A stretch of DNA of 64,000 bases from Scyliorhinus canicula (GCF_902713615.1 NC_052172.1:6677337-6741336), one strand, 5' to 3'; counted from the stretch's first letter, positions 33,011-63,848 are shown. The notes: generated by a model from the sequence alone, not told the origin. A program made the numbers and translations.

Positions 33011-33798
33011 TTATGCGAGCACCTCCTCACCCTCCTCATTCTCGTGTTCCTTCATGGTGTTCTCAATCCAGTCCAGATAGTTCCCTACATGGGTGTACAC
33101 CCCATAATGGCCACACTGCGGCGGACCAAACGATGCAATGCCCCTGACAATGTGACGACTGCGGTCGCGACGGTCCCGGAAGACGTATGGGCCCCCACTG
33201 TCCCCACGGCAGGAACCCACGCCCTGTCGTCCAGCGCAGATCATGTTTGGGGTGAAAATGGGCTTCTTTCCCTGGAAGTTGGAATTCTCACACTCATCCA
33301 TGCTGACGACGGGAACCTCGGCAAACTGCAGAAAGATCGCAAGGCTCCTATTTTCTGTCGTACCCCAGCCTGAAATGTAACCCAATGTACCGAAATCTGG
33401 CAGAGACACATCTCCTCGTTCAGGCAGGCAAAGGGGGGACAGGTTGGGTCCCAGTTTCACCTCTTCCTGGAGCTTGATCAATGCAATGTCGTGATTGAAG
33501 TTGGGTTGCCCGTGCTTGACCTGCTTGAATTTGGGGTGGATGAAGACCTGTTCAGCGAGGAGCATGTTCTTTGGTGATTTGTCCCTTAGATTAATAAATC
33601 CACCGTGAATTTCCACCTGGCGCGTGTTATCAAAGAGACAAGCGGTTGTCAACACCCACCTGTCGGAGATCAGGGCTCCTCCAGCCATCCGATTGCCGCT
33701 GGCGAGCAGACGTACCTGCCAGGGAAATTCACCCAGTTTTGCCCTTCTGCCACCAAAGATGCGTCCGGCATCGGAGGAGAGGAGGCATTTCCCGCAGA
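33011..33798 (-). CDS. C1S: C1s-like gene, last exon: linker, activation site and whole serine-protease domain
   Basis: ctccccag|TC TGC GGG AAA TGC...GR|IFGG...FPWQV...GGALISDRWVLTTAC...NHDIALI...GSCRGDSGGP...SFGPPQCGHYGVYT...TAA. Single exon, AGT Ser codon and no Cys42, all typical of C1r/C1s/MASP2/3. Confidence 0.9.
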
Positions 33799-34825
33799 CT
33801 GGGGAGAGATGATAGAATCAGAGGAATTGAAAAGCTCTTGGATCACTGTCCAAACACCAGGATTTGAGAGACTGCACACAGTGGCATCGTGTCACTCCAA
33901 CAGATAAGCTAAAGTCACTATTGTCCCAGATGACCATAGTCTGCTTTCCACTTTCAGGGGGGAGAGCTGACTGGTGGTGATTTAACCTGAGGGTCACCAC
34001 ACCTCAAGAGAGGGAAAAAGTCGAGAGGGAAGGGCCTTCGTGAATAACCTCAGGCCGTATGGGGAATTGAACCCACACTGTTGGCCTCACTCTGCATCAC
34101 AAACCAGCTGTCCAGCCATCTAGACTAAACCAGCCACCTCGCCAACAACCCCACTACACACCCTGCTCAGAGGGCATTGATTATTATTGTCACAAGTAGC
34201 CTTACATTAACACTGCAATGAAGTTACTGTGAAAAGCCCCTGGTCGCCACACTCTGGTGCCTGTTCGGTACACAGAGGGAGAATTCAGAATGTCCAATTC
34301 ACCTAACAAGTACGTCTTTCGGGATTTGTGGGAAGAAACCGGAGCACGTGGAAGAAACCTACGCCAGACACGGGGAGAACGTACAGACTCCGCACAGACA
34401 ATGACCCAAGCCGGGAATCGAACCCGGGACCCTGGAGCTGTGAGGTAACAGCGTTAACCACTGTGTTACCACCAACATGCCGCCCATTGAGTTGATATGG
34501 AATGAAAGAACATTAATATTATTGCTCATTTTGGGCACCCTGCATGTAAAATTTTTATGTGGGCTCGGTTTAGCTCACTTGGCTAGACAGCTGGTTTGCA
34601 ATGCAGAGCAAGGGGTTGTTTAGCAGGGGCTGTTTAGCACAGGGCTAAATCGCTGGCTTTGAAGGCAGACCAAGGCAGGTCAGCAGTACGGTTCAATTCC
34701 CGTAACAGCCTCCCCAACCACGCGCCAGAATGTGGTGACTAGGGGCTTTTCACAGTAACTTCATTTGCTGCCTACTTGTGACAATAAGCAATTTTCATTT
34801 CACTTCATTTCCAGGCCTGGGAACA

Positions 34826-37800
34826 TAGAACATAGAACATAGAACGATACAGCGCAGTACAGGCCCTTCGGCCCACGATGTTGCACCGACATGGGAAGTC
34901 AAAAACTAAAGGCCATCTAACCTACACTATGCCATTATCATCCATATGCTTATCCAATAAACTTTTAAATGCCCTCAATGTTGGCGAGTTCACTACTGTT
35001 GCAGGTAGGACATTCCACGGCCTCACCACTCTTTGCGTAAAAAACCTACCTCTGACCTCTGTCCTATATCTATTACCCCTCAATTTAAGGCTATGTCCCC
35101 TCGTGCTAGCCACCTCCATCCGCGGGAGAAGGCTCTCACTGTCCACCCTATCTAACCCTCTGATCATTTCGTATGCCTCTATTAAGTCACCTCTTAACCT
35201 TCTTCTCTCTAACGAAAACAAACTCAAGTCCATCAGCCTTTCCTCATAAGATTTTCCCTCCATACCAGGCAACATCCTGGTAAATCTCCTCTGCACCCTT
35301 TCCAAAGTTTCCACGTCCTTCCTATAATGAGGCGACCAGAACTGTACGTAATACTCCAAATGCGGCCGTACCAGAGTTTTGGACAGCTGCAACATGATCT
35401 CATGGCTCCGGAACTCAATCCCTCTACCAATAAAGGCCAACACACCATAGGCCTTCTTCACAACCCTATCAACCTGGATGGCAACTTTCAGGGATCTATG
35501 TACATGGACACCGAGATCCCTCTGCTCATCCACACTACCAAGAATTTTACCATTAGCCAAATATTCCGCATTCCTGTTATTCTTTCCAAAGTGAATCACC
35601 TCACACTTCTCTACATTAAACTCCATTTGCCACCTCTCAGCCCAGCTCTGCAGCTTATCTATGTCCCTCTGTAACCTGCAACATCCTCCCACACTGTCTA
35701 CAACTCCACCGACTTTAGTGTCGTCTGCAAATTTACTCACCCAACCTTCTGTGCCCTCCTCTAGGTCATTTATAAAAATGACAAACAGCAACGGCCCCAG
35801 AACAGATCCTTGTGGTACGCCACTCGTAACTGAACTCCATTCTGAACATTTGCCATCAACCACCACCCTCTGTCTTCTTTCAACTAGCCAATTTCTGATC
35901 CACATCTCTAAATCACCCTCAATCCCCAGCCACCGTATTTTCTGCAAGAGCCGACCGTGGGGTACCTTATCAAACGCTTTACTGAAATCCACGTACACCA
36001 CATCAACTGCTCTACCCTCATCTACCTGTTCAGTCACCTTCTCAAAGAACTCGATAAGGTTTGTGAGGCATGACCTACCCTTCACAAAACCATGCTGACT
36101 ATCCCTAATCATATTATTCCTATCTAGATGATTATAAATCATATCTCTTATAATCCTCTCCAAGACTTTACCCACAACAGACGTGAGGCTCACCGGCCTA
36201 TAGTTACCGGGGTTATCTCTACTCCCCTTCTTGAACAAAGGGACCACATTTGCTATCCTCCAGTCCTCTGGCACTATTCCTGTAGCCAATGATGACATAA
36301 AAATCAAAGCCAAAGGCTCAGCAATCTCTTCCTTGGCTTCCCAGAGAATCCTAGGATAAATCCCATCAGGCCCCGGGGACTTATCTATTTTCACCTTGTC
36401 CAGAATTGCCAACACTCTTCCCTACGCACCTCAAGCCATCTATTCTAATAGCCTGGGTCTCAGCATTCTCCTCCACAACATTATCTTTTTCCTGAGTGAA
36501 TACTGACGAAAAGTATTCATTTAGTATCTCGCTTATCTCCTCAGCCTCCAAACACAACTTCCCAGCACTGTCCTTGACTGGCCCTACTCTTACCCTAGTC
36601 ATTCTTTTGTTCCTGACATACCGAGAGAAAGCTTTTGGATTTTCCTTGATCCTATCTGCCAAAGACTTCTCATGTCCCCTCCTTGCTTGTCTTAGCTCTC
36701 TCTTTAGATCCTTCCTCGCTTCCTTGTAACTATCAAGCACCCCAACTGACACTTCACGCCTCATCCTTCTTCCTCTTAACAAGAGATTCCACTTCTTTGG
36801 TAAACCACGGTTCCCTCGCTCGACCCCTTTCCTCCCTGTCTGACTGGTACGTACTGATCAAGAACACGCAATAGCTGTTCCTTGAACAAGCTCCACATAT
36901 CCAGTGTGCCCAACCCTTGCAGCCTACTTCTCCAACCTACACATCCTAAGTCATGTCTAATGGCATCATAATTGCCCTTCGCCCAGCTATAACTTTTGCC
37001 CTGCGGGGTATACTTATCCCTTTCCATCACTAATGTAAAGGTCACCGAATTGTGGTCACCGTCTCCAAAGTGCTCACCTACCTGCAGATCTAACTCCTGG
37101 CCTGGTTCATTACCCAAAACCAAATCCAATGTGGCCTCGCCTCTTGTTGGCCTGTCAATATATTGTGTCAGGAAACCCTCCTGCACACATTGTACAAAGA
37201 ATGACCCATCTAATGTACTCGAACTATATCTTTTCCAGTCAATATTTGGAAAGTTAAAGTCTCCCATAACAACTACCCTGGTACTTTCGCTCTTTTCCAG
37301 AATCATCTTCGCCATCCTTTCCTCTACATCCCTAGAACTAATAAGTGGCCTATAGAAAACTCCCAACAGGGTGACCTCTCCTTTCCTGTTTCTAACCTCA
37401 GCCCATACTACCTCGGAAGAAGAGTCCCCATCTAGCATCCTTTCCGCCACCGTAATACTGTCATTGACTCACAGCGCCACACCTGCCCCTCTTTTGCCCC
37501 CCTCTCTGAGCTTACTAAAACACCTAAACCCCGGAACCTGCAACAACCATTCTTGTCCCTGCTCTATCCATGTCTCTGAAATGGCCACAACATCGAAGTC
37601 CCAGGTACCAACCCATGCTGCCAGTTCCCCTACCTTATTTCGTATACTCCTGGCATTGAAGTAGACACACTTCAAACCACCTACCTGAACACTGGAACAC
37701 TCCTGCAAAGTCAAATCTGTGCTCCTGACCTCTATACTCTCAATCTCCCGTACCCCAAAACTACAATCCAGTTTCCCATGCCCCTGCTGAATTAGTTTAA

Positions 37801-38720: not shown

Positions 38721-38734
38721 AAAAAAAAACAAGA

Positions 38735-39464: not shown

Positions 39465-39542
39465 CTGGTTTGCACTTTGGAAGGGTCTCCTGTCCACTCG
39501 CGACATCCACCCATTCAGCATTATGCGAGCAGTTAAAAATAG
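39465..39542 (-). CDS. C1S: C1s-like exon, CCP2 second half
   Basis: accag|CT...IFNCSHNAEWVDVASGQETLPKCKP G|gtaaat; 78 nt, phase 1/1. Confidence 0.92.
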
Positions 39543-45821: not shown

Positions 45822-45941
45822 CATTTCCTTCAAGTTTATAGTATGGCTCTTCACAGCTGTACTTGCTCTGTGATTTGTAAAAGGTGGATGTGAAATTACT
45901 GTATCCATTCTTCAATTTTGCTGGATATCCACAGTCCACAG
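45822..45941 (-). CDS. C1S: C1s-like exon, CCP2 first half
   Basis: tctcag|CT VDCGYPAKLKNGYSNFTSTFYKSQSKYSCEEPYYKLEGN G|gtgagt; 120 nt. Confidence 0.93.
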
Positions 45942-47345: not shown

Positions 47346-48554
47346 AACCCTCTAGGGAACCCTGAGCACTTTTCGAGTGAAGAAGTGTGTCCTCACCTCG
47401 ATCCGGAATGATCGGCTCCTTCTGCTGAGAATCTATCCCTTGTTCCAGCCATGTCAACCCTGTCAAAACCCAGTCAGAATCTTGTATGTTTCACAGAGAT
47501 CAGCTCTCATTCTCCCATAGAACATCAGCCCAGTTAACTCAGCCTCTCGCCACGGGGCAATCCTCTGATCCCAGGATCCAGTGCAAGTGTATCTTTCAAT
47601 AATTATCGGCCTGAATTTTTCGCATGGCAGAGGGTCAGCCCTTCCGGAGAGTCGACAGGGAACATACCCTGGTGACAGGTCCGTTATAATGAGCATTGAC
47701 TGGCAGGAGACAGATGATCCATCTTCACTAGGGCAGACGTCCCACGTTGGAGAGCTGCTGGCCAATCAGATTAACATGCTGCAGGCCCTCTGGACACTGA
47801 GTTTCAGTGGCCGTTAGAGGCGAAAAACATGGATCTCAGTGTCAGAGCGTAGAGGCAAAGTGAGTGGCAGGGATCCTGGGAGGATATGGGACACCTGGAG
47901 AGGATGTTGGTGGGGGAGAGGGTGGGGGGGGGGACGGGGGGGTGGGGGACGACAACAATTGGTATCCTGAAAGATTGGTGAGGGTGGTGGGGAGAAAGAG
48001 GTCCTGAGGTCTCCAAACGCTCAGGTGCCGATGTCTGCCCCCACCCCCGGCCACATCCGTCTCACCAAGATTTAGGTATTTCAATTTTTCTGTTCCTCCC
48101 CCAATTGCTCATTCATCCCTTATTCATTCACTGGAATTCAGGCTCGGTGGGTGAAGGTCCTTAAGTGGCCATTGACTGGTCAGTTACTGACATTAGCAGG
48201 AGAAATGGCATGCTTCCCCCACTCCCACCCCCCACTGAGGCCCTGCCCACCCCATCGTACAATTGGCACCAAGGTGGCAGTGTCAGGGTGCCTCCAATCC
48301 CCTGAGAGACTCTGACGAGTGTCATTCCGTCTGGCCCTTGTTTGTGGAGACCAGCACTGAGCGCACTGGCCCAAGTGGAAGGGGATCGATCCCAAATCCT
48401 CGGGAAACTGAATATCAAAGTGAGGCTAGCTGTCTCTCTCTAATACACAGATCCAGCAGAGGGCAGCAGAGCAGAGCTACTGATCAGCTGTTCTGGGCAA
48501 ATTTGCATACGTGCAGTGCGGTCAGCCTAATTTGAAGGTGGTTTGTGGAGGGGC

Positions 48555-49952
48555 TGTTGTCAAGAGATAACCCCGGTAACTATAGGCCGGTGAGCCTAAC
48601 GTCTGTGGTGGGTAAATGCTTGGAGAGGATTATAAAAGATACGATTTATAATCATATAGATAGGAATAATATGATTAGGGATAGTCAGCATGGTTTTGTG
48701 AAGGGTAGGTCATGCCTCACAAACCTTATCGAGTTCTTTGAGAAGGTGACTGAACAGGTAGACGAGGGTAGAGCAGTTGATGTGGTGTATATGGATTTCA
48801 GTAAAGCGTTTGATAAGGTTCCCCACGGTCGGCTATTGCAGAAAATATGGAGGCTGGGGATTAAGGGTGATTTAGAGATGTGGATCAGAAATTGGCTAGT
48901 TGAAAGAAGACAGAGAGTGGTAGGTGATGGGAAATGTTCAGAATGGAGGTCAGTTACGAGTGGTGTACCACAAGGATCTGTTCTTGGGCCGTTGCTGTTT
49001 GTCATTTTTATAAATGACCTAGAGGAGGGCGCAGAAGGATGGGTGAGTAAATTTGCAGACGACACTAAAGTCGGTGGAGTTGTAGACAGTGCAGAAGGAT
49101 GTTGCAGGTTACAGAGGGACATAGATAAGCTGCAGAGCTGGGCTGAGAGGTGGCAAATGGAGTTTAATGTGGAGAAGTGTGAGGTGATTCACTTTGGAAA
49201 GAATAACAGGAATGCGGAATATTTGGCTAATGGTAAAATTCTTGGTAGTGTGGATGAGCAGAGGGATCTCGGTGTCCATGTACATAGATCCCTGAAAGTT
49301 GCCACCCAGGTTGATAGGGTTGTGAAGAAGGCCTATGGTGTGTTGGCCTTTATTGGTAGAGGGATTGAGTTCTGGAGCCATGAGGTCATGTTGCAGTTGT
49401 ACAAAACTCTAGTACGGCCGCATTTGGAGTATTGCGTACAGTTCTGGTCGCCTCATTATAGAAAGGACGTGGAAGCTTTGGAACGGGTGCAGAGGAGATT
49501 TACCAGGATGTTGCCTGGTATGGAGGGAAAATCTTTTGAGGAAAGTCTGATGGACTTGAGGTTGTTTTCGTTAGAGAGAAGAAGGTTAAGAGGTGACTTA
49601 ATAGAGGCATACAAAATGATCAGAGGGTTAGATAGGGTGGACAGCGAGAGCCTTCTCCCGCGGATGGAGGTGGCTAGCACGAGGGGACATAGCCTTAAAT
49701 TGAGGGGTAATAGATATAGGACAGAGTTCAGAGGTGGGTTTTTTACGCAAAGAGTGGTGAGGCCGTGGAATGCCCTACCTGCAACAGTAGTGAACTCGCC
49801 AACATTGAGGGTATTTAAAAGTTTATTGGATAAGCATATGGATGATAAGGGCATAGTGTAGGTTACATGGCCTTTAGTTTTTTTCCATGTCGGTGCAACA
49901 TCGTGGGCCGAAGGGCCTGTACTGCGCTGTATCGTTCTATGTTCTATGTTCT
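48555..49952 (+). mobile_element. Young CR1 RT fragment, close to the 34826 copy
   Basis: 438-aa ORF 48545..49861, nearly colinear with ORF 34922..36415; (gttctat)n tail. Confidence 0.93.
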
Positions 49953-50819: not shown

Positions 50820-53790
50820 GAAGTTAGAGTTCAGTAAAGAGGCAGCAACTAAAGCCAGTAAGGTACTAGATAATAAACTCATTGTGACTCAGGGGAAGAG
50901 TAGACAGGGAAGAGATGATGAACGCAAAGTGACAGGTGGTCTGAGGTGCATTTGTTTTAGTGCGATAAGTGTAGCAGGTAAGACAGATGAACTTAGGGCT
51001 TGGATCAGTACCTGGGAATATGATGTTATTGGTATTACTGAGATTGGTTGAGGGAAGGGGAGGACTGGCAACTGAATATCCCAGGGTATAGATCCTTCAA
51101 GAGGGCTAGAGAGGGAGGTCGAATGGGTGGAGGAGTTGCATTGCTCGTCAGAGATGATATCACAGCTGTGATTAAAGAGGGCACGATGGAGGATTCGAGC
51201 ACTGAGGCAATATGGGTGGAGCTGAGAAGTAGGAAGGGTGCAGTAACATTGTTGGGACTTTACTACAGGCCTCCCAAAAGCGAGCATGAAGTAGAGGTAC
51301 AAATATTCAGACAGATTATAGAAAAATGTAGGAGCAATAGGGTGGTTGTGATGGGAGATTTTAACTTCCCCAACATTGAATGGGATTCGTGTACTTTTGG
51401 CGGTGTAGATGGAGCAGAGTTTGTAAGGAGCATCCAGGAGAGCTTTTTTTAGAGCAGTATGTAAATAGTCCAACTCGGGAAGGGGCCATACTGGACCTGG
51501 TATTGGGGAATGATCCCGGCCAGGTGGTTGATGTTTCAGTCGGTGATTACTTTGGGAATAGCGATCACAATTCCGAAGTTTTAGAATACTCATGGACAAG
51601 GACAAGAGTGGTCCGAAAGGAAGAGTACTAAATTGGGGAAAGGCAGAGTATAACAAAATTCGGCAGGAGCTAGGGAATGTGCATTGGGAGGAGATGTTTA
51701 AGGGTAAATCCACATTTGAAATGTGGGAGTCTTTTAAGGAAAGTTTGATTAGAGTGCAGGACAGACATGTTCCTGTGAAAATGAAAGATAGAAATGGCAA
51801 GATTAGGGAACCATGGATGACGGGTGAAATTGTGAGACTAGCTGAAGTGAAAAAGGAAGCATACATAGGATCGGGGCAACTCAAAACTGATGAAGCTTTG
51901 GAGGAATATCGGGAAAGTAGGACGAATCTTAAACGCGCAATAAAGAGGGCTAAAAGGGGTCATGAAATATCTTTGGCTAACAGGGTTTTATTCATATGTA
52001 AGGAGCAAGAGGGTAACTAGAGAAAGGATTGGCCCAGTCAAAGACAAAAGAGGAAATTTATGCGTAGACTCAGAGGAAATGGGTGAGATTCTTAATGAGT
52101 ACTTTGCATCGGTATTCACAAAGGAGAGGGACAAGACAGATGTTGAGGCTTGGGATGGATGTTTAAATACTCTCGGTCAAGTTGTCATACGGAAGGGGGA
52201 AATTTTGGATATTCTAAAAGACATTAAGGTGGACAAGTCCCCAGGACCGGATGGGATCTATCCCAGGTTACTGAGGGAAGCGAGGGTTGAAATAGCTGGG
52301 GCTTTAACATATCTTTGCAGCATCCTTGAGCATGGGTGAGGTCCCGGAGGACTGGAGAATTGATAATGTTGTCCCTTTGTGTCAGAAGGGTAGCAGGGAT
52401 AATCCAGGGAATTATAGACCTGTGAGCTTGACGTCAGTAGTAGGCAAACTGTTGGAGAAGATACTGAGGGATAGGATCTATTCACATCTGGAAGAAAATA
52501 GACTTATCAGTGATAGGCAGCATGGTTTTGTGCAGGGAAGGTCATGTCTTACAAACCTAATAGAATTCTTTGAGGAAGTGACAAAGTTAATTGATGAAGG
52601 AAGGGCTGTAGATGTCATATACATGGAGTTTAGTAAGGTGTTTGATAAGTTTTCCCATGGCAGGTTGATGGAAAAATTGAAATCGTATGGGGTTCAGGGT
52701 GTACTAGCTAGATGGATAAAGAACTGGCTGGGCAGCAGGAGACAGAGAGTAGTGGTGGAAGGGAGAGTCTCAAAATGGAGAAGGGTGACTAGTGGTGTTC
52801 CACAGGGATCCGTGCTCGGACCACTGTTGTTTGTGATCTACATAAATTACCTGGAGGAATGTATAGGTGGTCTGATTACCAAGTTTGCAGATGCTACTAA
52901 GATTAGTGGAGTTGCAGATAGCGAGGAGGGCTGTCAGAGAATACAACAAAATATAGATAGATTGGAGAGTTGGGCAGAGAAATGGCAGATGGAGTTCAAT
53001 CCAGGCAAATGCGAGGTGATGCATTTTGGAAGATCAAATTCAAGAGCGGACTATATGGTCAATGGAAGGGTCTTGGGGAAAATTGATGTACAGAGAGATT
53101 TGGGAGTTCAGGTCCATTGTACTCTGAAGGTGGCAACGGAGGTGGATAGAGTGGTCAAGAAGGCATACAGCATGCTTGCCTTCATCGGAAGGGGTATTGA
53201 GTACAAGAGTTGGCAGGTCATGTTACAGTTGTATTGGACTTTGGTTCGGCCACATTTGGAATACTGCGTGCAGTTCTGGTCGCCACATTTCCAGAAGGAT
53301 GTGGATGCTTTGGAGAGGGTGCAGAGGAGGTTCACCAGAATGTTGCCTGGTATGGAGGGTGCTAGCTATGAAGAAAGGTTGAGTAGATTAGGATTGCTTT
53401 CGCTGAAAAGACGGAGGTTGAGTGGGGACCTGATTGAGGTCTACAAAATTATGAGAGGTATGGACAGGGTGGATAGCAACAATCTTTTCCCAAGAGTGGG
53501 GGTGTCAGTTACAAGGGGTCACGATTTCAAGGTGAGAGGGGGAAAGTTTAAGGGAGATGTGCGTGGAAAGTTTTTTACGCAGAGGGTGGTGGGTGTCTGG
53601 AATGCTTTACCAGCGGAGGTAGTAGAGGCGGGCACGATAGCATCATTTAAGATGCATCTGGACAGGTATATGAACTGGCGGGAACAGCGGGAAGTAGACG
53701 TTGGAAAATAGGAGACTGGTTTAAATAAAGGATCTGGATCAACCCAGGCTGGGAGGGCCGAAGGGCCTGTTCCTGTGCTGCAATTTTCTT
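50820..53790 (+). mobile_element. CR1 with frameshifted ORF2 (APE + RT)
   Basis: ORF pieces 51048, 51380, 51592, 51962 and 52326..53711. Confidence 0.93.
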
Positions 53791-54009: not shown

Positions 54010-57000
54010 GAGAGTTGCTCTGATCCCAGTGTTAGCGGGAAAGAGAGGTTTTAAACTAATGTGGCAGGGGGATGGGAACCAATGCTGGAAGTTGGAAGGT
54101 AGTAAAACAGGGACAGAAACAAAAGGAAGTAAGGGGAAAAGTGCAAGGCAGAGAAGACATAGTCAGAAATCCATAAGGGCGACAGTACAAGGTACAGTGA
54201 CTGAGGGGAGCACAGTGAATAGGCCCAGTAATAACAAAAGGAATAAAACTGGAGATGTTAAGATTCAAAACAGAGGTTAAAAAACCAACATAAGTGTACT
54301 TTACCTGAATGCTCGTAGTATTCGGAATAAAGTAAATGAGTTGGTGGCACAAATCATCGTAAATGACTATGATTTAGTGGCCATTACTGAAACATGGTTA
54401 AAGGATGGTCACGACTGGGAGTTAAATATCCGAGGGTATCAAACTATTCGGAAGGACAGAGTGGATGGTAAGGGAGGTGGTGTTGCTCTGTTATTTAAGG
54501 ATGACATCCGGGCAATAGTAAGGGATGACATCGGTGCTATGGAGGATAAGGTTGAATCCATTTGGGTGGAAATCAGGAATAGTAAGGCGAAAAAGTCACT
54601 GATAGGAGTAGTCTATCGGCCACCAAATAGTAACGAGATGGTGGGGCAGGCAATAAACAAAGAAATAACTGATGCACGTAGAAATGGTACAGCAGTTATC
54701 ATGGGGGATTTTAATCTACATGTCGATTGGTTTAACCAGGTCGGTCAAGGCAACCGTGAGGAGGAGTTTATAGAATGTATCCGTGATAGTTTCCTAGAAC
54801 AGTATGTAATGGAACCTACGAGGGAACAAGCGGTCCTAGATCTTGTCCTGTGTAATGAGACAGGATTGATTCATAGAACATAGAACATAGAACGATACAG
54901 CACAGTACAGGCCCTTCGGCCCTCGATGTTGCACCGACATGGAAAAAATCTGAAGGCCATCTAACCTACACTATGCCCTTATCATCCATATGCTTATCCA
55001 ATAAATTTTTTAATGCCCTCAATGTTGGCGTGTTCACTACTGTTGCAGGTAGGGCATTCCACGGCCTCACCACTCTTTGCGTAAAAAACCCACCTCTGAC
55101 GTCTGTCCTATATCTATTACCCCTCAATTTAAGGCTATGTCCCCTCGTGCTAGCCACCTCCATCCGCGGGAGAAGGCTCTCGCTGTCCACCCTATCTAAC
55201 CCTCTGATCATTTTGTATGCCTCTATTAAGTCACCTCTTAACCTTCTTCTCTCTAACGAAAACAACCTCAAGTCCATCAGCCTTTCCTTATGATCTCATA
55301 GTTAGGGTTCCTCTCGGAAGGAGCGATCACAATATGGTGGAATTTAAAATACAGATGGAGGGTGAGAAAGTAAAATCAAATACTAGTGTTTTGTGTTTAA
55401 ACAAAGGAGATTACAAGGGGATGAGAGAAGAACTAGCTAAGGTAGACTGGGAGCTAAGACTTTATGGTGGAACAGTTGAGGAACAGTGGAGAACCTTCCA
55501 AGCGATTTTTCACAGTGCTCAGCAAAGGTTTATACCAACAAAAAGGAAGGACAGAAGAAAGAGGGAAAATCGACCGTGGATATCTAAGGAAATAAGGGAG
55601 AGTATCAAATTGAAGGAAAACGCATATAAAGTGGCAAAGATTGCTGGGAGATTAGAGGACTGGGAAATCTTTAGGGGGCAACAGAAAGCTACTACAAAAG
55701 CTATAAAGAAGAGTAAGATAGAGTATGAGAGTAAACTTGCTCAGAATATAAAAACAGACAGTAAAAGTTTTTACAAATATATAAGACAAAAAAGAGTGAC
55801 TAAGGTAAATATTGGTCCTTTAGAGGATGAGAAGGAGTTTTAATAATGGGAAATGAGGAAATGGCTGAGGAACTGAACAGGTTTTTTGGGTCGGTCTTTA
55901 CAGTGGAAGACACAAATAACATGCCAGCGACTGATAGAAATGAGGCTATGACAGGTGAGGACCTTGAGAGGATTGTTATCACTAAGGAGGGAGTGATGGG
56001 CAAGCTAATGGGGCTAAAGGTAGACAAGTCTCCTGGCCCTGATGGAATGCATCCCAGAGTGCTAAAAGAGATGGCTAGGGAAATTGCAGATGCACTAGTG
56101 ATAATTTACCGAAATTCACTAGACTCTGGGGTGGTCCCGGTGGATTGGAAATTAGCAAACGTGACGCGACTGTTTAAAAAAGGAGGTAGCCAGAAAGCAG
56201 GAAATTATAAGCCAGTGAGTTTAACTTCGGTAATAGGGAAGATGCTGGAATCTATCATCAAGGAAGAAATTGCGAGGCATCTGGATAGAAATTGTCCCAT
56301 TGGGCAGACGCAGCATGGGTTCGTAAAAGGCAGGTCATGCCTAACTAATTTAGTGGAATTTTTTGAGAACATTACCAGTGCAGTAGATAACGGGGAGCCG
56401 ATGGATGTGGTATATCTGGATTTCCAGAAAGCCTTTGACAAGGTGCCACACAAAAGGTTGCTGCATAAGATAAAGATGCATGGCATTAAGGGTAAAGTAG
56501 TAGCATGGATAGAGGATTGGTTAATTAATAGAAAGCAAAGAGTTGGAATAAATGGGTGTTTCTCTGGTTGGCAATCAGTAGCTAGTGGTGTCCCTCAGGG
56601 ATCCGTGTTGGGCCCACAATTGTTCACAATTTACATTGATGATTTGGAGTTGGGGACCAAGGGCAATGTGTCCAAGTTTGCAGATGACACTAAGATGAGT
56701 GATAAAGCGAAAAGTGCAGAGGATACTGGAAGTCTGCAGAGGGATTTGGATAGGTTAAGTGAATGGGCTCGGGTCTGGCAGATGGAATACAATGTTGACA
56801 AATGTGAGGTTATCCATTTTGGTAGGAATAACAGCAAACAGGATTATTATTTAAACGATAAAATATTAAAGCATGCCGCTGTTCAGAGAGACTTGGGTGT
56901 GCTAGTGCATGAGTCACAGAAGGTTGGTTTACAAGTGCAACAGGTGGTTAAGAAGGCAAATGGAATTTTGTCCTTCATTGCTAGAGGGATGGAGTTTAAG

Positions 57001-57610
57001 ACTAGGGAGGTTATGTTGCAATTGTATAAGGTGTTAGTACGGCCACACCTGGAGTATTGTGTTCAGTTTTGGTCTCCTTACTTGAGAAAGGACGTACTGG
57101 CGCTGGAGGGTGTGCAGAGGAGATTCACTAGGTTAATCTCAGAGCTGAAGGGGTTGGATTATGAGGAGAGGTTGAGTAGACTGGGACTGTACTCGTTGGA
57201 ATTTAGAAGGATGAGGGGGGATCTTATAGAAACATTTAAAATTATGAAGGGAATAGATAGGATAGATGCGGGCAGGTTGTTTCCACTGGCGGGTGACAGC
57301 AGAACTAGGGGGCATAGCCTCAAAATAAGGGGAAGTAGATTTAGAACTGAGTTTAGGAGGAACTTCTTCACCCAAAGGGTTGTGAATCTATGGAATTCCT
57401 TGCCCAGTGAAGCAGTTGAGGCTCCTTCATTACATGTTTTTAAGGTAAAGATAGATAGTTTTTTGAAGAATAAAGGGATTAAGGGTTATGGTGTTCGGGC
57501 CGGAAAGTGGAGCTGAGTCCACAAAAGATCAGCCATGATCTAATTGAATGGCGGAGCAGGCTCGAGGGGCCAGATGGCCTACTCCTGCTCCTAGTTCTTA
57601 TGTTCTTATG
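54010..57610 (+). mobile_element. CR1 ORF2 interrupted by a younger antisense CR1 fragment
   Basis: APE 54341..54883, continuation from ~55292, RT 55846..57516, (ttcttatg)n tail. Confidence 0.93.
54873..55290 (-). mobile_element. Nested young CR1 3' fragment
   Basis: ORF 54966..55277 almost identical to the C-termini of the 34922 and 48545 ORFs; host reads ETGLIH|DLIVRVPLGRSDHN across it. Confidence 0.92.
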
Positions 57611-58140
57611 AAAGACAGCTAGTCTACCTTTGTTTCTTCACAAAATGACAAGTGCTCCTGAATACAAACACATCGCAGAATTGTAAATCAGACCAAAATA
57701 TTGAACACTGTGCCCCATCAGGTGATGTTAGGCAAGGTGGGCCACAACTTAATTGAAAGCAAGAACATATTTGAGGTAAAAAGAGAAAATATCTGGACAA
57801 TCTGAACAGGTCTGACAATATCTGTGGAGAGTGAAGGGAGGTAACCTTTTGAGTCTGGATAACTGTCAACTTTGAAAAAGAGTCACCCAGACTCAATAGT
57901 TAGATGCCTTCTCTCTCCACAGATGCTGTCCGTTGAAATTGTCCAGTGTTTTCTCTTTTTGTTTCAGATTCCAGCATCAGGAATAAGTCACTTTTATCAA
58001 CAAATTTGAGAAGGTGTTTGACTGACTCCTGTTCCTACGTGAACAGTAGTTTACTCAATAGGTAACGTTGGGGGAGCCAGTATTGAGGGGAAATGACAAA
58101 TAGAGAGACCTATTCTACCCCCACCTATCGGGATACTTAC

Positions 58141-58228
58141 GCACGCAGGAGTACGGGATACTGTTCCAGGTCCCATCCTTCTGGCAATGCACCATGGCAT
58201 AGTCAATGTACTGACTTTCTTGTGTATC
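58141..58228 (-). CDS. C1S: C1s-like exon, CCP1 second half
   Basis: ttgcag|DTQESQYIDYAMVHCQKDGTWNSIPYSCV C|gtaagt; 88 nt, phase 0/1. Confidence 0.92.
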
Positions 58229-59369
58229 CTGCAAGGTTAAGTTTAGGAAACCATATTATAGCAGATCATAGAAACCTGATGCGAGTTCTCAAGAGTGAGC
58301 CATTAGCTGTGGTTCTGTGACATCACCAACGGGGGGAGACAGAGAGCAGAGTGAATGAGTGACATGGGAACTGGTGGAATTTCAATTCAATTAAATTAAA
58401 TCAGGAATATAAACCTAGTCTCAAAATCGAGGGCCATGAAACTATCAACTGTCGTTAACAAAAACCCATTCTGGTTCACTAATTGTGGTGATTATCCAGT
58501 ACATCTTTACACTAATGTCCTTTGAGGAAGGAAATCTGCCATCCTTACTCAGTCTGGCCTACACGTGACTCCAGATCCACACCAACCTTGGGAGCTCTGC
58601 TGCAGACCTTCCTCCAAACTGAAAAAAAAAAATCAATTTTTAACCTCTATCTTTCCTGTCACTCGGCCAATCTCGTATCTGTGTTTCTACTATCCCTTTT
58701 ATTCAGTGAGTTCGAAATTTGCTCACAAGTCTGTTGTGTGGTACTTAATGAAATGTGTTTTGGATGTATAGGCATGCCACATCAACAATATCACTCCCAT
58801 CGGCAGCACGGTGGTGCAGTGGGTTAGCCCTGCAGCCTCACGTTGCTGAGGTTCCAGGTTCGATCCTGGCTTTGAGTCACTGTCCGTGTGGAGTTTGCAC
58901 ATTCTCCCTGTGTTTGAGTGGGTTTTGCCCCCACAACCCAAAGATGTGCAGGATTAGATGGATTGGCCGCGTTAAATTGCCCCTTAATTGGAAAAAATTA
59001 AGTGGATAAATTTATTTTTTAAAAATCATCCTCATCGACCCTCTCTGTTACCTCTTCAAAGAAAATCCAGCAAATTGGTTGAACACAATTTGCCCTCAAC
59101 AAATTAACCCGTAGTTTCCTAAGGGAACATTAATTTTGCCTCTAATTATCATTTCTAGAAGTTCCCCCAGCATTGAGGTCAAACGGACTGGTTTGCAGTT
59201 GTTGAGTTTACCCTTACACCCATTCCTAAACAAGGGTGTAACATTTGCATTTCTCCAGTCCTCTGATACTATTCCGAGTGGGAAATTATTGTCAAGACTC
59301 TGTAGTTTTCACCCTAATTTCCCTCAGTATCCTTAGATGGATTTAATGCAGTCTTGGAGTCTAATTCTT

Positions 59370-59735
59370 GTTTTTCATTTGTTCATGGGACGTGGGCGTT
59401 GTTGGCTGTGCAAATATTTATTGCCCACGCCTAATTGCCCTTGAGAGGGCAGTTAAGAGTCAACCACATTGCTGTGGGTCTGGAGCCACATGTAGGCCAG
59501 ACCAGGTAAGGACGGTAGATTTCCTTCCCTAAAGGACATTAGTCCTGATTGGTTTTTATAACAATCGACAATGGTTTCATGGTCACCGTTAGACTTTTAA
59601 ATCCAGATTTTTATTGAGTTTAAATTCCATCAGCTGCCATGATGGGATTTGAACCCGGGTCTCGAGATCATTATCCTGGGTCTCTGGATTACTAGTCCAG
59701 CGATAATACCACCGACTATGCCACCGTCTCCCCAA
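59370..59735 (-). mobile_element. DeuSINE-like SINE (partial plus-strand copy at ~58360-58590)
   Basis: gtcctttagggaaggaaatct...ccttacctggtctggcctaca core and tRNA-like head; recognised from memory. Confidence 0.6.
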
Positions 59736-60609
59736 ATCATCTCTAAAGTACCGACATCCTCTTCCATTTCTCCTCCTTACCAATTTTAAATCATTTAAGT
59801 GTCTGAACTTCTCTCTCTTTCACCATGTATCTTCTTCCTTGGTAAAGACATTTAACATCTCAGCCAATCCCCTGCCTCCTTTTTGGTTCCGAATCATCCC
59901 AATCCTCCTCTTATCAGCCTTTTTACGTGCCGACAGAAGTCTTTTGAATTCCCTTTTATTTTAGCTACCAGCCTCTTCTCATACTCTCTCTGTACTTCTG
60001 TTATTTGCTTATCAATTCCTTGCTGCAGTTTCTATATTATCCATGTGTCATAAACACAGCTTTATCCAGATCTGTTTTGTTATCCAAGGAGCTCTAGAAT
60101 TGTTTGCCTTTCCCTTCCTGAGGATGTACTTTGGTGGCTGCTGAATTCTCATTTCTTTAAAGCAGCCAATTCGTCTGTTACAAGCTAACCTGCCAACTTC
60201 AAATTCTAATTTATCTGAACCAGATCCATTCTTACTCCATTATAGTTCCCTTTTTCCACAGTTATTTATTCCAAATCTGTTCCTTGTTCTTTTCTATAGC
60301 CAACCGAAACCTCATGAGACAATGATCACTGTTCCCTTTTGATATGTGATGTACTTGGCCCACCTCATCCCCCCAGGAACCAGGTCTAAATGTGACGTCC
60401 CTCTCATTGGACTGGGAATAGATCACTGCAGAATCTTCACCCGGACACACTTTAGGAACCTTTATCCTTCTCTGTCTTTTAGGCTTTCACTACCCCAATC
60501 CTTATTTGGATAATTAAAGTCCCCCATTATGGCCACTGTACAATACCTGCACCTTTCTGTAATTAACTTGAAAATTGGTTCCCACTTAAAATTGTACCAT
60601 TTTGTTTAT

Positions 60610-61175
60610 AGCAGGAGCAGACCATTCAGCCCTTCAAGCCGACTCTGCCATTCATTGTGATCATGGCTGATCATCCAACTCAATACTGTAGTCTGTACCC
60701 ACCTTCCCCCCATATCCTCTGATTCCGTTTGCCCTAAGAGCTGTATCTAACTGCTTCTTGAAAACATCCAATATTTTGGCCTCAACTATTTCCTGTGGTA
60801 ACGAATTCCACAGACCGACCACTCTCTGGGTGAAGGAATTTCTCCTCATCACTGTCCTAAATGGTCTACCCTGTATCCTCCGACTGTGACCCCCGGTTAT
60901 GGACACACCCACCATCGGGAACATCCCTCCTGCATCTATCCAGTCTCGTCCTGTTAGAGTTTGATAAGTTTCTATGAGATCCCCCTCAATCCTCTGAACT
61001 CCAGTGATACAATCCATTCAATTCATCTCTCCTCAGACACCAGTCCTGCCAGTCCAGGAATCAGTCTGGTAAACCTTTGCTGCACTCCCTCTAGAGCAAG
61101 AACATCCCTCCTCAGATATGGAGACCAAAACTGCACACACTATTCCTGTGTGGCCTCACCAAAGCCCTGTATAAT
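60610..61175 (-). mobile_element. Degraded CR1 3' fragment
   Basis: GDLIETY...FTQRVVGLWNSLP motifs. Confidence 0.8.
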
Positions 61176-61737
61176 TGCACCAGTTTGAAAGCTTTGAAAT
61201 TGTGTTCTCTGCACCCAAGTCTAGGTCATTATCTGAAATAACGAAATATTTTTATTTATATAGCGCCTTTCAACACCTGAGGACATCAAAAGTGGTTTAT
61301 CGCCAATGAAGTGACAGCACTATTCCAATATAGGAAAGGTTATAAGCAAATTACATGGAGAAAACTCCTGCAAACAATAATGGCCACTTTTTTTTCCAAG
61401 ATGCTAACTGAGGGACATATGTTGGCCAAGACACTGGGGGTAACTCCCCTGCTTTTCTTCAAAATAGTGGTCGCGACAGCCTTACTGCTCCCTGAAAGGA
61501 TCCCGGTTTAATGAAAGACTGAACCTCCGACAGTGCAGAGTTCTTTATTCAATCCTGCACTAACATTTTGGGTTAGACTCTTTCACTCTGGTGTGGGAAT
61601 CAAACCCCCAACCTTATAAATCAGGGCAGAAACCGTCGACATTAAAAATTACAACCAACTTGGCCAGAATAAAAATGGGACCGAATGTTCACGGACTTTC
61701 TTCAATGGAACACACAATCTAATGGGTGATAACTTAC

Positions 61738-61850
61738 GTAGAGTTCAAACCCACTCTCACAGTGCAGTCGCACAGAATCTTTATAATCATATTCCACTTT
61801 CTTTGGCTGAATAATGCTGTGCTCCAAGATATCGGTAGGACATTGTTTAG
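61738..61850 (-). CDS. C1S: C1s-like exon, CCP1 first half
   Basis: ctgcag|CT KQCPTDILEHSIIQPKKVEYDYKDSVRLHCESGFELY|gtaagt; 113 nt, phase 1/0. Confidence 0.92.
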
Positions 61851-62486
61851 CTGCAGGCAAAACACACAGAATACCTTGTTAGTCTCCAATAGACCACAAA
61901 CAACATTTCCACAGAGCAATACAGTACAGGTGAGGCCGGTCAGTCCGGGATGTCTCTGACAGACAATGGTCCCTCTCCCTATAGTCTTTTCCCTTGAAAT
62001 ATTTAAACAGTTCCCCCTTTAAAGGTTGAACTCTATTACACTTCCCCTCAATAATTTAAGATTATTAACACTTTTGGCAAACGTTTTCACAGCTCAACTC
62101 TGCTTACCACCTTTCTCTGTGTTGGTGTTAAATATCCGCTGTGGTTCAAAGGGTAAAACTCTCATTTAAGAGTCATGACGTCGGGGGTTCATGTCCCACA
62201 CCAGAGAGTTTGGCTCATAATCTAGGCTGACATTCCCAGCGTTAACGAGGGAATCTGCCAGCGTTGAGAGAGTGCTGCGCTGTCGGAGAGTCAGTACTGA
62301 GCATGTAGATTATTAGCAACATATTGTGTACGAGCAGCACATAGACTATTAGCATCACATAGAGTATTAGCAGCATATAGAGTATGAGCAACATTTAGAT
62401 TATTAGCAGCCTATAGAAACCCTGGAGAAGGTAAGCCACTGGGAAAAGTAGAAAGCAAGGTGGTTTCAGCAAATCCTGAGTATTAC

Positions 62487-62634
62487 CGGTTGATTTGTAA
62501 ATGATCTTCCAGCCTTTCCTCTCCCCGTGTTCATCCGTGTTGAAAGTTATTTCCACCACATTGGACAAATGTCCTTTTATAACTGGTGCTTGGTCTCCAC
62601 AGAACGGGCCATATACCCTTCCTCCAGATGTGAC
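62487..62634 (-). CDS. C1S: C1s-like exon, CUB2 second half
   Basis: ttccag|VTSGGRVYGPFCGDQAPVIKGHLSNVVEITFNTDEHGERKGWKIIYKST G|gtaata; 148 nt, phase 0/1. Confidence 0.93.
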
Positions 62635-62965
62635 CTGGAATCAGGAGAATCCGCATTGGTTACAGAATTATGGAAAAGTCCGATGCTGGAGGAGGCCACT
62701 CAGCCCATCACATCTGTACTAGAGCAATCCAGTTTGTCCCACTCCCTCTGCTTTGGCATCTCGTCCAGCAAAGGTTTTTCTATAATTTATTTGTCTAAAC
62801 CTTTCACAATTATGAATGCCTCGAACCAATCCCCTCCTCGCTTTCTCATTTCTAAAGGGGACTAATTCCAGCTGTTCCAATCTCCCACGTAATCCCATTG
62901 CCGAACCCTGGAACCATTGGAAAATTGATGGTTAATATTCGTTTCACCTGTGAGGAGAGAAAGAG

Positions 62966-63131
62966 NNNNNNNNNNNNNNNNNNNNNNNNNNNNNNNNNNN
63001 NNNNNNNNNNNNNNNNNNNNNNNNNNNNNNNNNNNNNNNNNNNNNNNNNNNNNNNNNNNNNNNNNNNNNNNNNNNNNNNNNNNNNNNNNNNNNNNNNNNN
63101 NNNNNNNNNNNNNNNNNNNNNNNNNNNNNNN
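62966..63131. other. Assembly gap flanked by AG-rich microsatellite
   Basis: Run of N inside the intron between the two CUB2 exons. Confidence 0.99.
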
Positions 63132-63289
63132 AGAGAGCGAGAGAAAGAGAGAGAAATAGAGAGAGAGAGTAACTGAAAGAATGCTTAAGATCAAGTTCTC
63201 TCCAGTGGCATTGACCACGAGAGGTTAGCAGTCTGTGCAATGGGCTGGAGAAGGGCTGAATGTCCTCTTCCTGCTGTGTTTAACAGGCT

Positions 63290-63595
63290 GGAGTGGGATT
63301 CAATACAATGGTTAGTACTGTTGCTTCACAGCGCCAGGGTCCCAGGTTCGAGTCCTGGATTGGGTCACTGTCTGTGCAGAGTCTACACGTTCTCCCCGTG
63401 TCTGCGTGGGTTTCCTCCGGTTGCGCCAGTTTCTTCCCACAAGTCTCAAAAAACATGCTGTTTGGTGAATTGGACATTCTGAATTCTCCCTCGGTGTACC
63501 CTAACAGGCGCCGGAATGTGCGACTCGGGGATTTTCATGGTACTTCATTGCAGTGTTAAGGTAAGCCTACTTGTCAGAATAATAAAGATTATTAT
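63290..63595 (+). mobile_element. SINE (V-SINE-like head with second-family tail)
   Basis: ggttagtactgttgcttcacagcgccagggtcccaggttcgag head; tail ending aataaagattattat. Confidence 0.75.
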
Positions 63596-63651
63596 CATGT
63601 CTTAAGGGACTTGCTGTAGGGATTAAGGGACCATTTTAAAGAGGGCCATAC

Positions 63652-63848
63652 CTTTAAGACATCAGTTATGCAACCGACTGAAGGGTCCCCTTCCACCTCA
63701 AAATCCTTTGCGAATCCCAGGATCACCTCGAAGCCTTGCTCAATCTCGATTCTGTACTGACACTGAGAGTTCTCCGCATAAGGTTCAGGATAGTTGGGGC
63801 TGGTGATCATGCCCTTGAAGCTGGTGGACACTTCGCCGCTGCAATTCA
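63652..63848 (-). CDS. C1S: C1s-like exon, CUB2 first half (CUB1 and EGF exons would lie beyond the window)
   Basis: ccccag|TG NCSGEVSTSFKGMITSPNYPEPYAENSQCQYRIEIEQGFEVIL...VLK|gtatgg; resembles human C1s CUB2 (NCSGDVFT...SPNYPKPYPENSRC) more than C1r. Confidence 0.92.

What the first reader, a model, noticed from the sequence alone, without database searches (positions are those of the whole stretch)
33011..63848. Intact C1s-like gene predicted to encode a catalytically dead protease (His57 to Cys, Asp189 to Gly)
Seen: seven exons (1532 nt) splice in frame with canonical GT-AG sites and no stops. The R|IFGG activation site, Asp102 (HDIAL) and Ser195 (GDSGG, AGT at 33197-33199) are kept. The TAAH motif reads TTAC (TGT at 33638-33640, two substitutions from a His codon) and the S1 residue is Gly (GGT at 33215-33217). 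Established: His57 is essential in S1 proteases, Asp189 confers the Arg specificity C1s needs for C4/C2, and haptoglobin arose from this family by losing catalysis. Inference: a shark C1s paralog turned into a cleavable but non-proteolytic scaffold, decoy or ligand binder that may still join C1q complexes if CUB1-EGF are present. This could be an independent haptoglobin-like neofunctionalisation or a built-in complement regulator.
Basis: partly seen in the sequence, partly recalled or inferred. Interest (0 to 1): 0.82.

Follow-up and report, generated by a model that had tools for sequence, protein, structure and literature searches.

The report
Catalytically dead catshark C1s duplicate
One of three tandem copies of the catshark complement protease gene C1s is full length and transcribed but lacks two residues needed to cut protein, and a sister copy lacks a third, so extra C1s copies in sharks seem to lose protease function quickly.

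Summary
Seven in-window exons (1532 nt) plus three upstream exons give an intact 689-aa CUB1-EGF-CUB2-CCP-CCP-SP gene with GT-AG introns. It equals RefSeq XP_038641925.1, 'C1s-like', of Scyliorhinus canicula. His57 is Cys (TGT 33638-33640) and Asp189 is Gly (GGT 33215-33217). Arg|Ile, Asp102 and Ser195 are kept. The N gap lies in the intron between the two CUB2 exons.

The gene is a true C1s by PDB score and phylogeny, not a haptoglobin. It is one of three about 95% identical tandem copies inside a TCR V-gene cluster. Copy B is fully canonical. Copy A has Ser195Gly. This copy (W) has His57Cys and Asp189Gly. W and A also share Asp98Asn at the CUB1 residue that contacts C1q.

Contigs from independent public runs carry the exact W sequence at exon-only depth, so it is real and transcribed.

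W's changes are compatible with neutrality (omega about 1.2). In the protease exon they hit conserved and variable columns alike and cluster around codon 57. A is under purifying selection (omega 0.18). Dead or damaged C1s duplicates also occur in Chiloscyllium, Mobula and Carcharodon.

Most likely this is a young duplicate released from protease constraint. A selected non-catalytic role remains possible.

The parts
33011..33798 (-). Exon 10: the whole serine-protease domain plus the stop codon (TAA 33013-33011)
   Evidence: Single open exon; Pfam Trypsin 5e-48; best PDB match human C1s at 210 bits; AlphaFold model pLDDT 87, TM 0.85 to human C1s
33638..33640 (-). TGT = Cys at chymotrypsin position His57 (protein residue 481)
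   Evidence: Paralogs A and B read CAT. The exact sequence is present in contigs of X15 and X1.
33215..33217 (-). GGT = Gly at the S1 position Asp189 (residue 622)
   Evidence: Paralogs read GAT. The C at 33216 has about 2800 depth in X15.
33197..33199 (-). AGT = Ser195, retained here (GGT = Gly in paralog A)
   Evidence: codon table
33488..33490 (-). GAC = Asp102, retained
   Evidence: invariant column
33758..33763 (-). CGC ATC = Arg|Ile zymogen activation site, retained
33554..33725 (-). Island holding 15 of the 17 substitutions private to this copy in exon 10; it surrounds codon 57
   Evidence: Binomial p = 1e-8 for clustering. No donor sequence elsewhere in the genome.
39465..39542 (-). 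Exon 9: second half of CCP2
   Evidence: tblastn to shark C1s, AG/GT bounds, and RNA contigs join it to exon 10
45822..45941 (-). Exon 8: first half of CCP2
   Evidence: Pfam Sushi, tblastn
58141..58228 (-). Exon 7: second half of CCP1
   Evidence: tblastn to Mobula and Callorhinchus C1s, AG/GT bounds
61738..61850 (-). Exon 6: first half of CCP1
   Evidence: Pfam Sushi, AG/GT bounds
62487..62634 (-). Exon 5: second half of CUB2
62966..63131 (.). Assembly gap, inside the intron between exons 4 and 5
   Evidence: Intron length matches the paralogs.
63652..63848 (-). Exon 4: first half of CUB2. Exons 1-3 (CUB1 and EGF) lie beyond the window end at extended coordinates 93058-92842, 91408-91231 and 67431-67312 (L013, L011).
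   Evidence: Pfam CUB 8e-15; tblastn; model is 100% identical to XP_038641925.1 over 681 aa

Best explanation
Shown: the window holds copy W of a three-copy tandem array of the small-spotted catshark C1s gene. The copies are named B, W and A here and lie about 140 kb apart on the same strand, among TCR V segments. W is full length (689 aa, CUB1-EGF-CUB2-CCP1-CCP2-SP), correctly spliceable and transcribed. Its protease domain lacks the general base (His57 to Cys) and the S1 Asp (Asp189 to Gly). Inferred: W cannot cleave C4/C2 as C1s does. Inferred history: an older duplication separated canonical B from a W/A-type lineage. That lineage changed Asp98, the C1q-lysine contact in CUB1, to Asn, loosening its tie to C1. 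Catalysis then became dispensable, and each daughter copy lost a different catalytic residue (W: His57 and Asp189; A: Ser195). Gene conversion has homogenised most of exon 10 and left a divergent island around codon 57 in W. W's protease domain now evolves without detectable constraint. The most likely state of W is therefore a young, expressed duplicate that is redundant as a protease and on the birth-and-death path. If secreted, it would be an inert, C1r-cleavable C1s look-alike.
For: Gene model and intact ORFs of all three copies. C1s identity: human C1s 210 bits against MASP-2 163 and C1r 161, with haptoglobin not in the top 60. The trio sits in the chondrichthyan C1s clade, which groups with tetrapod C1s at 89/92, and nests after the split from S. 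torazame at 100/99. Real and transcribed: exon-only depth, contigs spliced from exon 9 to exon 10, exact W-type contigs in two studies, and W-specific words in four studies. Relaxed constraint: private substitutions are W 4 synonymous / 18 non-synonymous (omega 1.21, neutral p = 1), A 9/6 (omega 0.18, p = 0.0012), and W versus A Fisher p = 0.015. In the protease exon, W's changes fall on columns of average conservation (mean entropy 1.81 against 1.87 for all columns), including Ala55, His57, Asp189 and Val213. B's changes fall only on variable columns (mean 3.31). Asp98Asn; the role of Asp98 is taken from PMC4222235. Mosaic history: intron flanks of exons 1-9 put B 5.2% away and W and A 0.6-0.95% away, while all three are about 1% apart around exon 10. 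Decaying duplicates elsewhere: Carcharodon P0001 is truncated, with Asp189Ala and GWG changed to ESG.
Against: No stop, frameshift or splice defect in 2070 nt. Hitting 2 of the 4 key residues with about 15 random replacements has p about 0.003, and A's hit on Ser195 has p about 0.03. A is under purifying selection despite Ser195Gly. Asp98Asn plus loss of Ser195 recurs in Chiloscyllium. These points argue that inactivation may be favoured rather than merely tolerated. Counts are small, and gene conversion blurs the branch assignments. W's exon 10 carries more private changes than its flanks (2.16% against 0.89%, p = 0.04), which could also reflect positive selection.
Confidence: 0.5

Rival explanations
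1. Selected pseudoprotease. The W/A type is a maintained, non-catalytic C1s-like protein. It could be a decoy or dominant-negative partner of C1r, or a new ligand binder uncoupled from C1q by Asp98Asn and a glycan. Loss of catalysis was favoured, and W is a functional member of this type.
For: Non-random hits on catalytic residues in two sister copies (p about 0.003 and 0.03). A has omega 0.18. ORFs and splice sites are intact and the gene is transcribed. Asp98Asn is shared by W, A and the Ser195Ala copy of Chiloscyllium, and is absent from more than 25 canonical C1s. Ser195Ala also occurs in a Mobula birostris copy. The divergent island around codon 57 resisted the homogenisation seen in the rest of exon 10.
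Against: W itself shows omega about 1.2, and its replacements fall on conserved fold positions. Cys57 adds an eighth cysteine to the protease exon, against seven in A and B. W-type contigs are absent from several RNA runs and sit at roughly a tenth of the paralogs' contig depth where present. S. torazame has only one annotated copy in the 90% cluster. The dead copies group by species, so no old conserved lineage is demonstrable.
Confidence: 0.3
2. Assembly or haplotype artefact. W and A would be two alleles of one locus kept as a false tandem duplication, or the scaffold join at the N gap would link exons from different copies. In that case the gene as drawn does not exist as one molecule.
For: A scaffold gap lies inside the gene. 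W and A differ by only about 1.5% in introns. RNA runs show different combinations: X15 has A, W and B types, X1 has W and B, X9 has B only. That pattern fits one B locus plus a polymorphic second locus.
Against: The two dead codons lie on one contig side together with exons 5-10 and are confirmed in independent runs. Both sides of the gap are W/A type, and the intron length matches the paralogs. W and A differ structurally in intron 9 and in gene length, 60 kb against 58 kb. Even if allelic, the dead allele is real.
Confidence: 0.1
3. It is the shark ortholog of haptoglobin, or an equally old haptoglobin-like gene.
For: A dead protease of the MASP/C1r/C1s family, as haptoglobin is. Haptoglobin is reported in cartilaginous fish (Redmond et al. 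2018, cited in PMC9207270 and PMC7579410).
Against: It has full C1s architecture with two CUBs and an EGF. It nests among species-level C1s copies. Teleost haptoglobins fall outside the C1s clade. Haptoglobin is not among the 60 best PDB matches. A different, old, dead C1s-like gene on contig C29 is the better candidate: it has His57Ser and Ser195Gly, is conserved across elasmobranchs, and scores 116 bits to haptoglobin.
Confidence: 0.02
4. It is still an active protease using a non-canonical catalytic arrangement.
For: Ser195, Asp102, the oxyanion-hole glycines and the activation site are kept.
Against: No chymotrypsin-fold enzyme is known to work without a base at position 57; this is established knowledge, not tested here. 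The S1 Asp is also lost, and neighbouring conserved residues (Ala55, Val213) are replaced.
Confidence: 0.02

Closest known systems
Complement C1s (S1A peptidase; human C1s structures 1ELV, 4J1Y, 1NZI, 4LOR)
   Same: Same six-module architecture. Single-exon protease domain with an AGY Ser195 codon. No Cys42-Cys58 pair. Arg|Ile activation site. Best sequence match (210 bits) and best fold match (TM 0.85). Sits inside the chondrichthyan C1s clade, which groups with tetrapod C1s.
   Different: His57 is Cys and Asp189 is Gly. The CUB1 C1q-lysine contact Asp98 is Asn within a new N-F-S sequon. It is one of three tandem copies and lies inside a TCR V cluster.
Haptoglobin (a dead protease of the MASP/C1r/C1s family)
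   Same: A chymotrypsin-fold domain that has lost catalysis in a plasma-protein family. Derived from the same protease family.
   Different: Haptoglobin is old, lacks the CUB and EGF modules, and in mammals has lost His57 and Ser195 (recalled, not tested here). This gene is a recent species-level duplicate with all modules. It keeps Ser195 and shows no sign of constraint on its protease domain.
Duplicated C1s/C1r genes of mouse (C1sA/C1sB) and carp (C1r/s-A and -B); recalled from memory, not checked here
   Same: Lineage-specific tandem duplication of a classical-pathway protease.
   Different: Those duplicates are reported to keep the catalytic residues. Here two of three copies have lost them.
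Other elasmobranch C1s duplicates seen here: Chiloscyllium punctatum XP_072405253.1 (Asp98Asn, Ser195Ala), Mobula birostris partial (Ser195Ala), Carcharodon XP_041035062.1 (Asp189Ala, truncated)
   Same: An extra C1s copy beside a canonical one, with a key residue lost and a longer branch than its canonical partner.
   Different: Different residues are lost in each. Each groups with its own species' canonical gene. None has His57Cys.

Membership tests
Complement C1s | CUB1-EGF-CUB2-CCP1-CCP2-SP architecture | tested here: met
   Ten coding exons, 689 aa; Pfam CUB, Sushi and Trypsin; tblastn to shark C1s; 100% match to the RefSeq model
Complement C1s | Groups with C1s of other vertebrates rather than C1r, MASP or haptoglobin | tested here: met
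   C1s superclade 98/94; grouping with tetrapod C1s 89/92; shark C1s tree follows the species tree; PDB ranking
Complement C1s | Single-exon protease domain, AGY codon for Ser195, no Cys42-Cys58 disulfide (marks of the C1r/C1s/MASP-2/Hp lineage, from established knowledge) | tested here: met
   Exon 10 encodes the whole domain. Ser195 is AGT. The position next to residue 57 is Leu and the aligned upstream position is Ala, not Cys.
Complement C1s | Arg-Ile zymogen activation site | tested here: met
   GR|IFGG at 33763-33758
Complement C1s | Catalytic triad His57-Asp102-Ser195 | tested here: not met
   His57 is Cys (TGT). Asp102 and Ser195 are present.
Complement C1s | Asp189 at the base of S1 (Arg specificity) | tested here: not met
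   Gly (GGT 33215-33217)
Complement C1s | CUB1 Ca2+/C1q-lysine site: Glu45, Asp53, Asp98, Ser100 | tested here: not met
   Glu45, Asp53 and Ser100 are kept. Asp98 is Asn (SNFSN); it aligns to residue 98 of 1NZI. The exon lies beyond the window and across the gap.
Complement C1s | Cleaves C4 and C2 within the C1 complex | not testable with these tools
   Needs recombinant protein
Haptoglobin | Orthology with vertebrate haptoglobin | tested here: not met
   Teleost haptoglobins fall outside the C1s clade. Haptoglobin is absent from the best 60 PDB hits.
Haptoglobin | Reduced architecture (CCP-SP or SP only) | tested here: not met
   All six modules are present
Haptoglobin | Binds haemoglobin | not testable with these tools
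   Needs protein work
Unprocessed pseudogene | Stop codon, frameshift or broken splice site | tested here: not met
   2070-nt ORF open; all in-window introns GT-AG
Unprocessed pseudogene | Not transcribed | tested here: not met
   Exact W-type contigs at exon-only depth in X15 and X1
Unprocessed pseudogene | Neutral substitution pattern (omega near 1, conserved sites hit) | tested here: met
   Omega 1.21; column-entropy test p = 0.43 in the protease exon. Small counts.

The most novel reading that the evidence does not exclude
Elasmobranchs repeatedly make non-catalytic C1s paralogs. The sequence would be tandem duplication, then uncoupling from C1q by Asp98Asn (with a possible glycan), then loss of a catalytic residue. 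The products would be kept as built-in, C1r-cleavable but inert modulators of the classical pathway, or as new binders. The catshark W/A pair and the Chiloscyllium copy would be convergent instances, and the island around codon 57 in W would be held against gene conversion by selection.
Probability: 0.25. Interest if true: 0.75.

Novelty: new variant of a known kind. Interest (0 to 1): 0.55.

Why it matters
C1s is the executing protease of the antibody-triggered complement pathway, which first appears in jawed vertebrates. I found no report of naturally occurring, full-length, expressed C1s copies that lack catalytic residues; four of my five literature searches bore on this and found none. 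The catshark has two such copies, dead in different ways, next to one live copy, and similar copies occur in three other elasmobranch lineages. If they are retained, they would be a natural dominant-negative or decoy layer on C1. They would also be a living model of how haptoglobin-type pseudoproteases start. If they are decaying, they show how fast immune protease duplicates die and how gene conversion shapes them. Either way, the three genes should not all be counted as functional C1s in comparative complement inventories.

Tried and rejected
1. Haptoglobin ortholog: rejected by PDB ranking and trees.

2. Assembly error at the two codons: rejected by independent contigs.

3. Gap disrupting the reading frame: rejected. 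The gap is intronic and CUB2 is complete.

4. Gene conversion from another locus as the source of the 172-nt island: no donor in the genome. Only the three copies match, at 100, 92 and 90%. The island's density (8.7%) fits old neutral W-versus-B divergence (p = 0.08) but not W's local flank rate (p = 1e-10).

5. Test for purifying selection on W's exons 1-9 against their intron flanks: no power (0.39% against 0.60%, p = 0.42).

6. Redmond et al. 2018 (shark haptoglobin) could not be read. Its content is cited only through other papers, so I could not check whether the old dead gene on C29 is their haptoglobin.

8. An old conserved 'dead C1s' lineage across sharks: not supported by full-length trees, where the copies group by species. 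Only two shared sites (Asp98Asn and a Thr-to-Ala four residues before the EGF module) link catshark W/A with the Chiloscyllium copy.

9. Ser195Gly of copy A was read from the assembly only, not confirmed in reads.

10. No complex prediction was run, because no C1r partner was identified with confidence.
Full report
**Observation**

The gene lies on the minus strand. Exon 10 (33798-33011) is one open exon that encodes the whole protease domain and the stop codon. It matches Pfam Trypsin at 5e-48.

The motif normally read as TAAH reads TTAC, with TGT at 33640-33638. The S1 residue is Gly, GGT at 33217-33215. The Arg|Ile activation site (33763-33758), Asp102 (33490-33488) and Ser195 (AGT 33199-33197) are kept.

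The seven in-window exons are 63848-63652, 62634-62487, 61850-61738, 58228-58141, 45941-45822, 39542-39465 and 33798-33011.

The N gap (62966-63131) lies in the intron between the two CUB2 exons.
- CUB2 is complete when aligned to other shark C1s.
- The intron is 1017 nt here against about 1000 nt in both paralogs.
- Both sides of the gap are of the same sequence type.
- Continuity across the gap itself was not shown independently.

**Full gene**

I fetched 40 kb beyond the window and ran tblastn with shark C1s proteins. This located CUB1 (two exons) and EGF upstream. The resulting model has 2070 nt and 689 aa with the architecture CUB1-EGF-CUB2-CCP1-CCP2-SP.

It is 100% identical over 681 aa to RefSeq XP_038641925.1, 'complement C1s subcomponent-like [Scyliorhinus canicula]'. 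The RefSeq model starts with a short extra 5' exon, giving MW....

**What it is**

- The protease domain scores 210 bits to human C1s, against 163 to MASP-2 and 161 to C1r. Haptoglobin is not among the best 60 PDB matches.
- An AlphaFold model (pLDDT 87) matches human C1s best, at TM 0.85.
- In a 52-sequence tree of protease domains, the gene sits in a chondrichthyan clade with the Chiloscyllium, Carcharodon, Heptranchias, Mobula and Callorhinchus 'C1S' sequences.
- That clade groups with tetrapod C1s (89/92) inside a C1s superclade (98/94). Teleost haptoglobins, C1RL and MASP-2-like sequences lie outside it.

**Three tandem copies**

A search of the window's own genome found three nearly identical protease exons on the same contig and strand. 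They lie at 6.56 Mb (copy A), 6.71 Mb (this window, copy W) and 6.85 Mb (copy B). All ten coding exons are present and colinear in each copy, and each copy has an open 689-aa frame and conserved splice sites.

| Copy | RefSeq | Catalytic residues |
|---|---|---|
| B | XP_038641923/4 | His57, Asp102, Asp189 and Ser195 all present |
| A | XP_038641926 | Ser195 is Gly (GGT) |
| W | XP_038641925 | His57 is Cys and Asp189 is Gly |

**CUB1**

W and A, but not B, have Asn in place of the Asp in the SDFSN motif. This creates an N-F-S sequon.
- The residue aligns to Asp98 of human C1s in 1NZI.
- Asp98 directly contacts the lysine of the C1q collagen stem, and its mutation strongly alters C1q binding (PMC4222235).
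- More than 25 canonical C1s sequences, from sharks to mammals, keep the Asp.
- The link between this exon and W's protease exon depends on the scaffold join at the gap.

**Reality and expression**

I laid the contigs of four public runs on 32700-34100.
- Depth covers the exon and 3' end and falls to near zero in the intron.
- Loose ends at 33802 read the end of exon 9. These are therefore spliced RNA.
- An exact W-type contig covers 33525-33676 in X15 (depth 3009, beside an A-type contig at 4440).
- A W-type contig with one mismatch covers 33533-33683 in X1 (depth 246, beside a B-type contig at 1797).
- The C at 33216 and the G at 33135 each have about 2800 depth in X15.
- The long contig of X9 is B type, and no W or A type is seen there.
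- A run of a second, closely related species (X7) shows a His/Asp type transcript.
- W-specific 31-mers are held by runs of four studies, two of them apparently DNA.

Contig depth is a poor measure of expression, so I claim only that W is transcribed. The mixed patterns (A, W and B in X15; W and B in X1; B alone in X9) leave open that W and A are tissue-limited or polymorphic.

**Selection**

I assigned each difference to the copy that stands alone, then computed omega.

| Copy | Synonymous | Non-synonymous | Omega | Test against neutrality |
|---|---|---|---|---|
| W | 4 | 18 (14 in the protease exon) | 1.21 | p = 1 |
| A | 9 | 6 | 0.18 | p = 0.0012 |
| B | 12 | 29 | 0.65 | not significant |

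W differs from A by Fisher's test at p = 0.015.

In a 49-sequence alignment of the protease domain, W's replacements fall on columns of average conservation (mean entropy 1.81 against 1.87 for all columns, p = 0.43). They include the near-invariant Ala55, His57, Asp189 and Val213. B's replacements fall only on variable columns (mean entropy 3.31). This is the signature of a protease domain released from constraint.

**Mosaic history**

- Intron flanks of exons 1-9 place B 5.2% from the W/A pair, while W and A are only 0.6-0.95% from their common state.
- Around exon 10 all three copies are about 1% apart.
- In exons 1-9 W is closest to A. In exon 10 A is closest to B. The 3' end has therefore been exchanged among the copies.
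- Inside this homogenised region, 15 of W's 17 private exon-10 changes sit within 172 nt around codon 57 (33554-33725; p = 1e-8). No donor exists elsewhere in the genome.
- At two of these positions W keeps the state seen in S. torazame and other sharks, and A and B share the derived state.
- The island's density fits old W-versus-B divergence that escaped conversion (p = 0.08). It does not fit W's local rate (p = 1e-10).

**Is inactivation random?**

With about 15 derived replacements in 689 residues, hitting two of the four key residues has p about 0.003. A's six replacements hitting one of the four has p about 0.03.

Extra C1s copies in other elasmobranchs show the same tendency:
- Chiloscyllium punctatum XP_072405253.1 has Asp98Asn and Ser195Ala.
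- A partial Mobula birostris model has Ser195Ala.
- Carcharodon XP_041035062.1 has Asp189Ala and is truncated.

In a full-length tree each of these groups with its own lineage's canonical C1s and has the longer branch. The catshark trio nests after the split from S. torazame (100/99), for which only one annotated copy sits in the same 90% cluster.

These facts argue that loss of catalysis in duplicates is either favoured or very readily tolerated. The Carcharodon copy shows that decay is one outcome.

**Reading**

I put the most weight (0.5) on this account. A W/A-type lineage loosened its tie to C1q (Asp98Asn), catalysis became dispensable, and W is now a young, expressed but redundant copy whose protease domain drifts.

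A maintained pseudoprotease, acting as a decoy or dominant-negative partner of C1r or as a new binder, gets 0.3. It rests on the non-random hits, the constraint on A and the recurrence in Chiloscyllium. An allelic or scaffold artefact gets 0.1. It would not remove the dead allele.

Haptoglobin orthology and residual activity are unlikely. A different, old dead C1s-like gene lies next to an intact one on contig C29. It has His57Ser and Ser195Gly and is conserved in Pristiophorus, Cetorhinus, Chiloscyllium and Leucoraja. It is the better candidate for the cartilaginous-fish haptoglobin reported by Redmond et al. 2018, which I could cite only second-hand.

**Novelty**

The gene is annotated, but I found no description of dead C1s paralogs; four of my five literature searches bore on this and found none. 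I class it as a new variant of a known kind: a pseudoprotease arising from the complement protease family.

Noticed in passing
G000:C27:6561071-6561856 (L002) and the whole copy in L015-L021: Paralog A (XP_038641926.1) has Ser195 to Gly (GGT) with His57 and Asp189 intact. It shares Asp98Asn with W, and its private changes show omega 0.18. It is a second dead C1s that looks constrained.
   Followed up: partly
L013:7232-7408 (CUB1 second exon, beyond the window end): W and A have SNFSN where all canonical C1s have SD[FY]SN. This is Asp98, the C1q-lysine contact, changed to Asn within a new N-X-S sequon. The only other case found is the Ser195Ala copy of Chiloscyllium punctatum (P0368), which also shares a Thr-to-Ala four residues before the EGF module.
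   Followed up: partly
L004 and L005 (G000:C29:11.578-11.592 Mb): A tandem pair of more distant C1s-like genes. L004 has an intact triad. L005 has His57Ser and Ser195Gly. The dead type is conserved across sharks and a skate as short EGF-CCP-SP models, and it scores 116 bits to human haptoglobin. It may be the shark haptoglobin of the literature.
   Followed up: partly
L007 (G000:C2:16996556-16997338): A C1r/MASP-like single-exon protease domain reads GDTGG, so Ser195 is replaced by Thr.
   Followed up: no
window 10029-10451, 14682-15209, 20284-20673 (minus strand): Three V-set gene segments ending in YYCAWS (Pfam V-set, 2e-15 to 5e-10) lie downstream of the C1s gene on the same strand. Notes from other windows describe further TCR V segments upstream. 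The C1s triplication therefore sits inside a TCR V cluster, which recalls the trypsinogen genes inside the mammalian TRB locus.
   Followed up: partly
window 33011-34030 compared with the rest of the gene: The exon 10 region of the three copies is about 1% apart, while the intron flanks of exons 1-9 put copy B 5.2% away. In exon 10, A resembles B rather than W. This is evidence of gene conversion or unequal crossing-over at the 3' end.
   Followed up: yes
window 34922-36415, 48545-49861, 52326-53711, 55846-57516: Long reverse-transcriptase ORFs of LINE-type elements fill the large introns of the C1s gene, on both strands.
   Followed up: no
runs X15, X1, X9 laid on window 32700-34100: Different samples carry different sets of copy types: A, W and B in X15; W and B in X1; B only in X9. 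W and A may be polymorphic in presence or expressed only in some tissues.
   Followed up: partly
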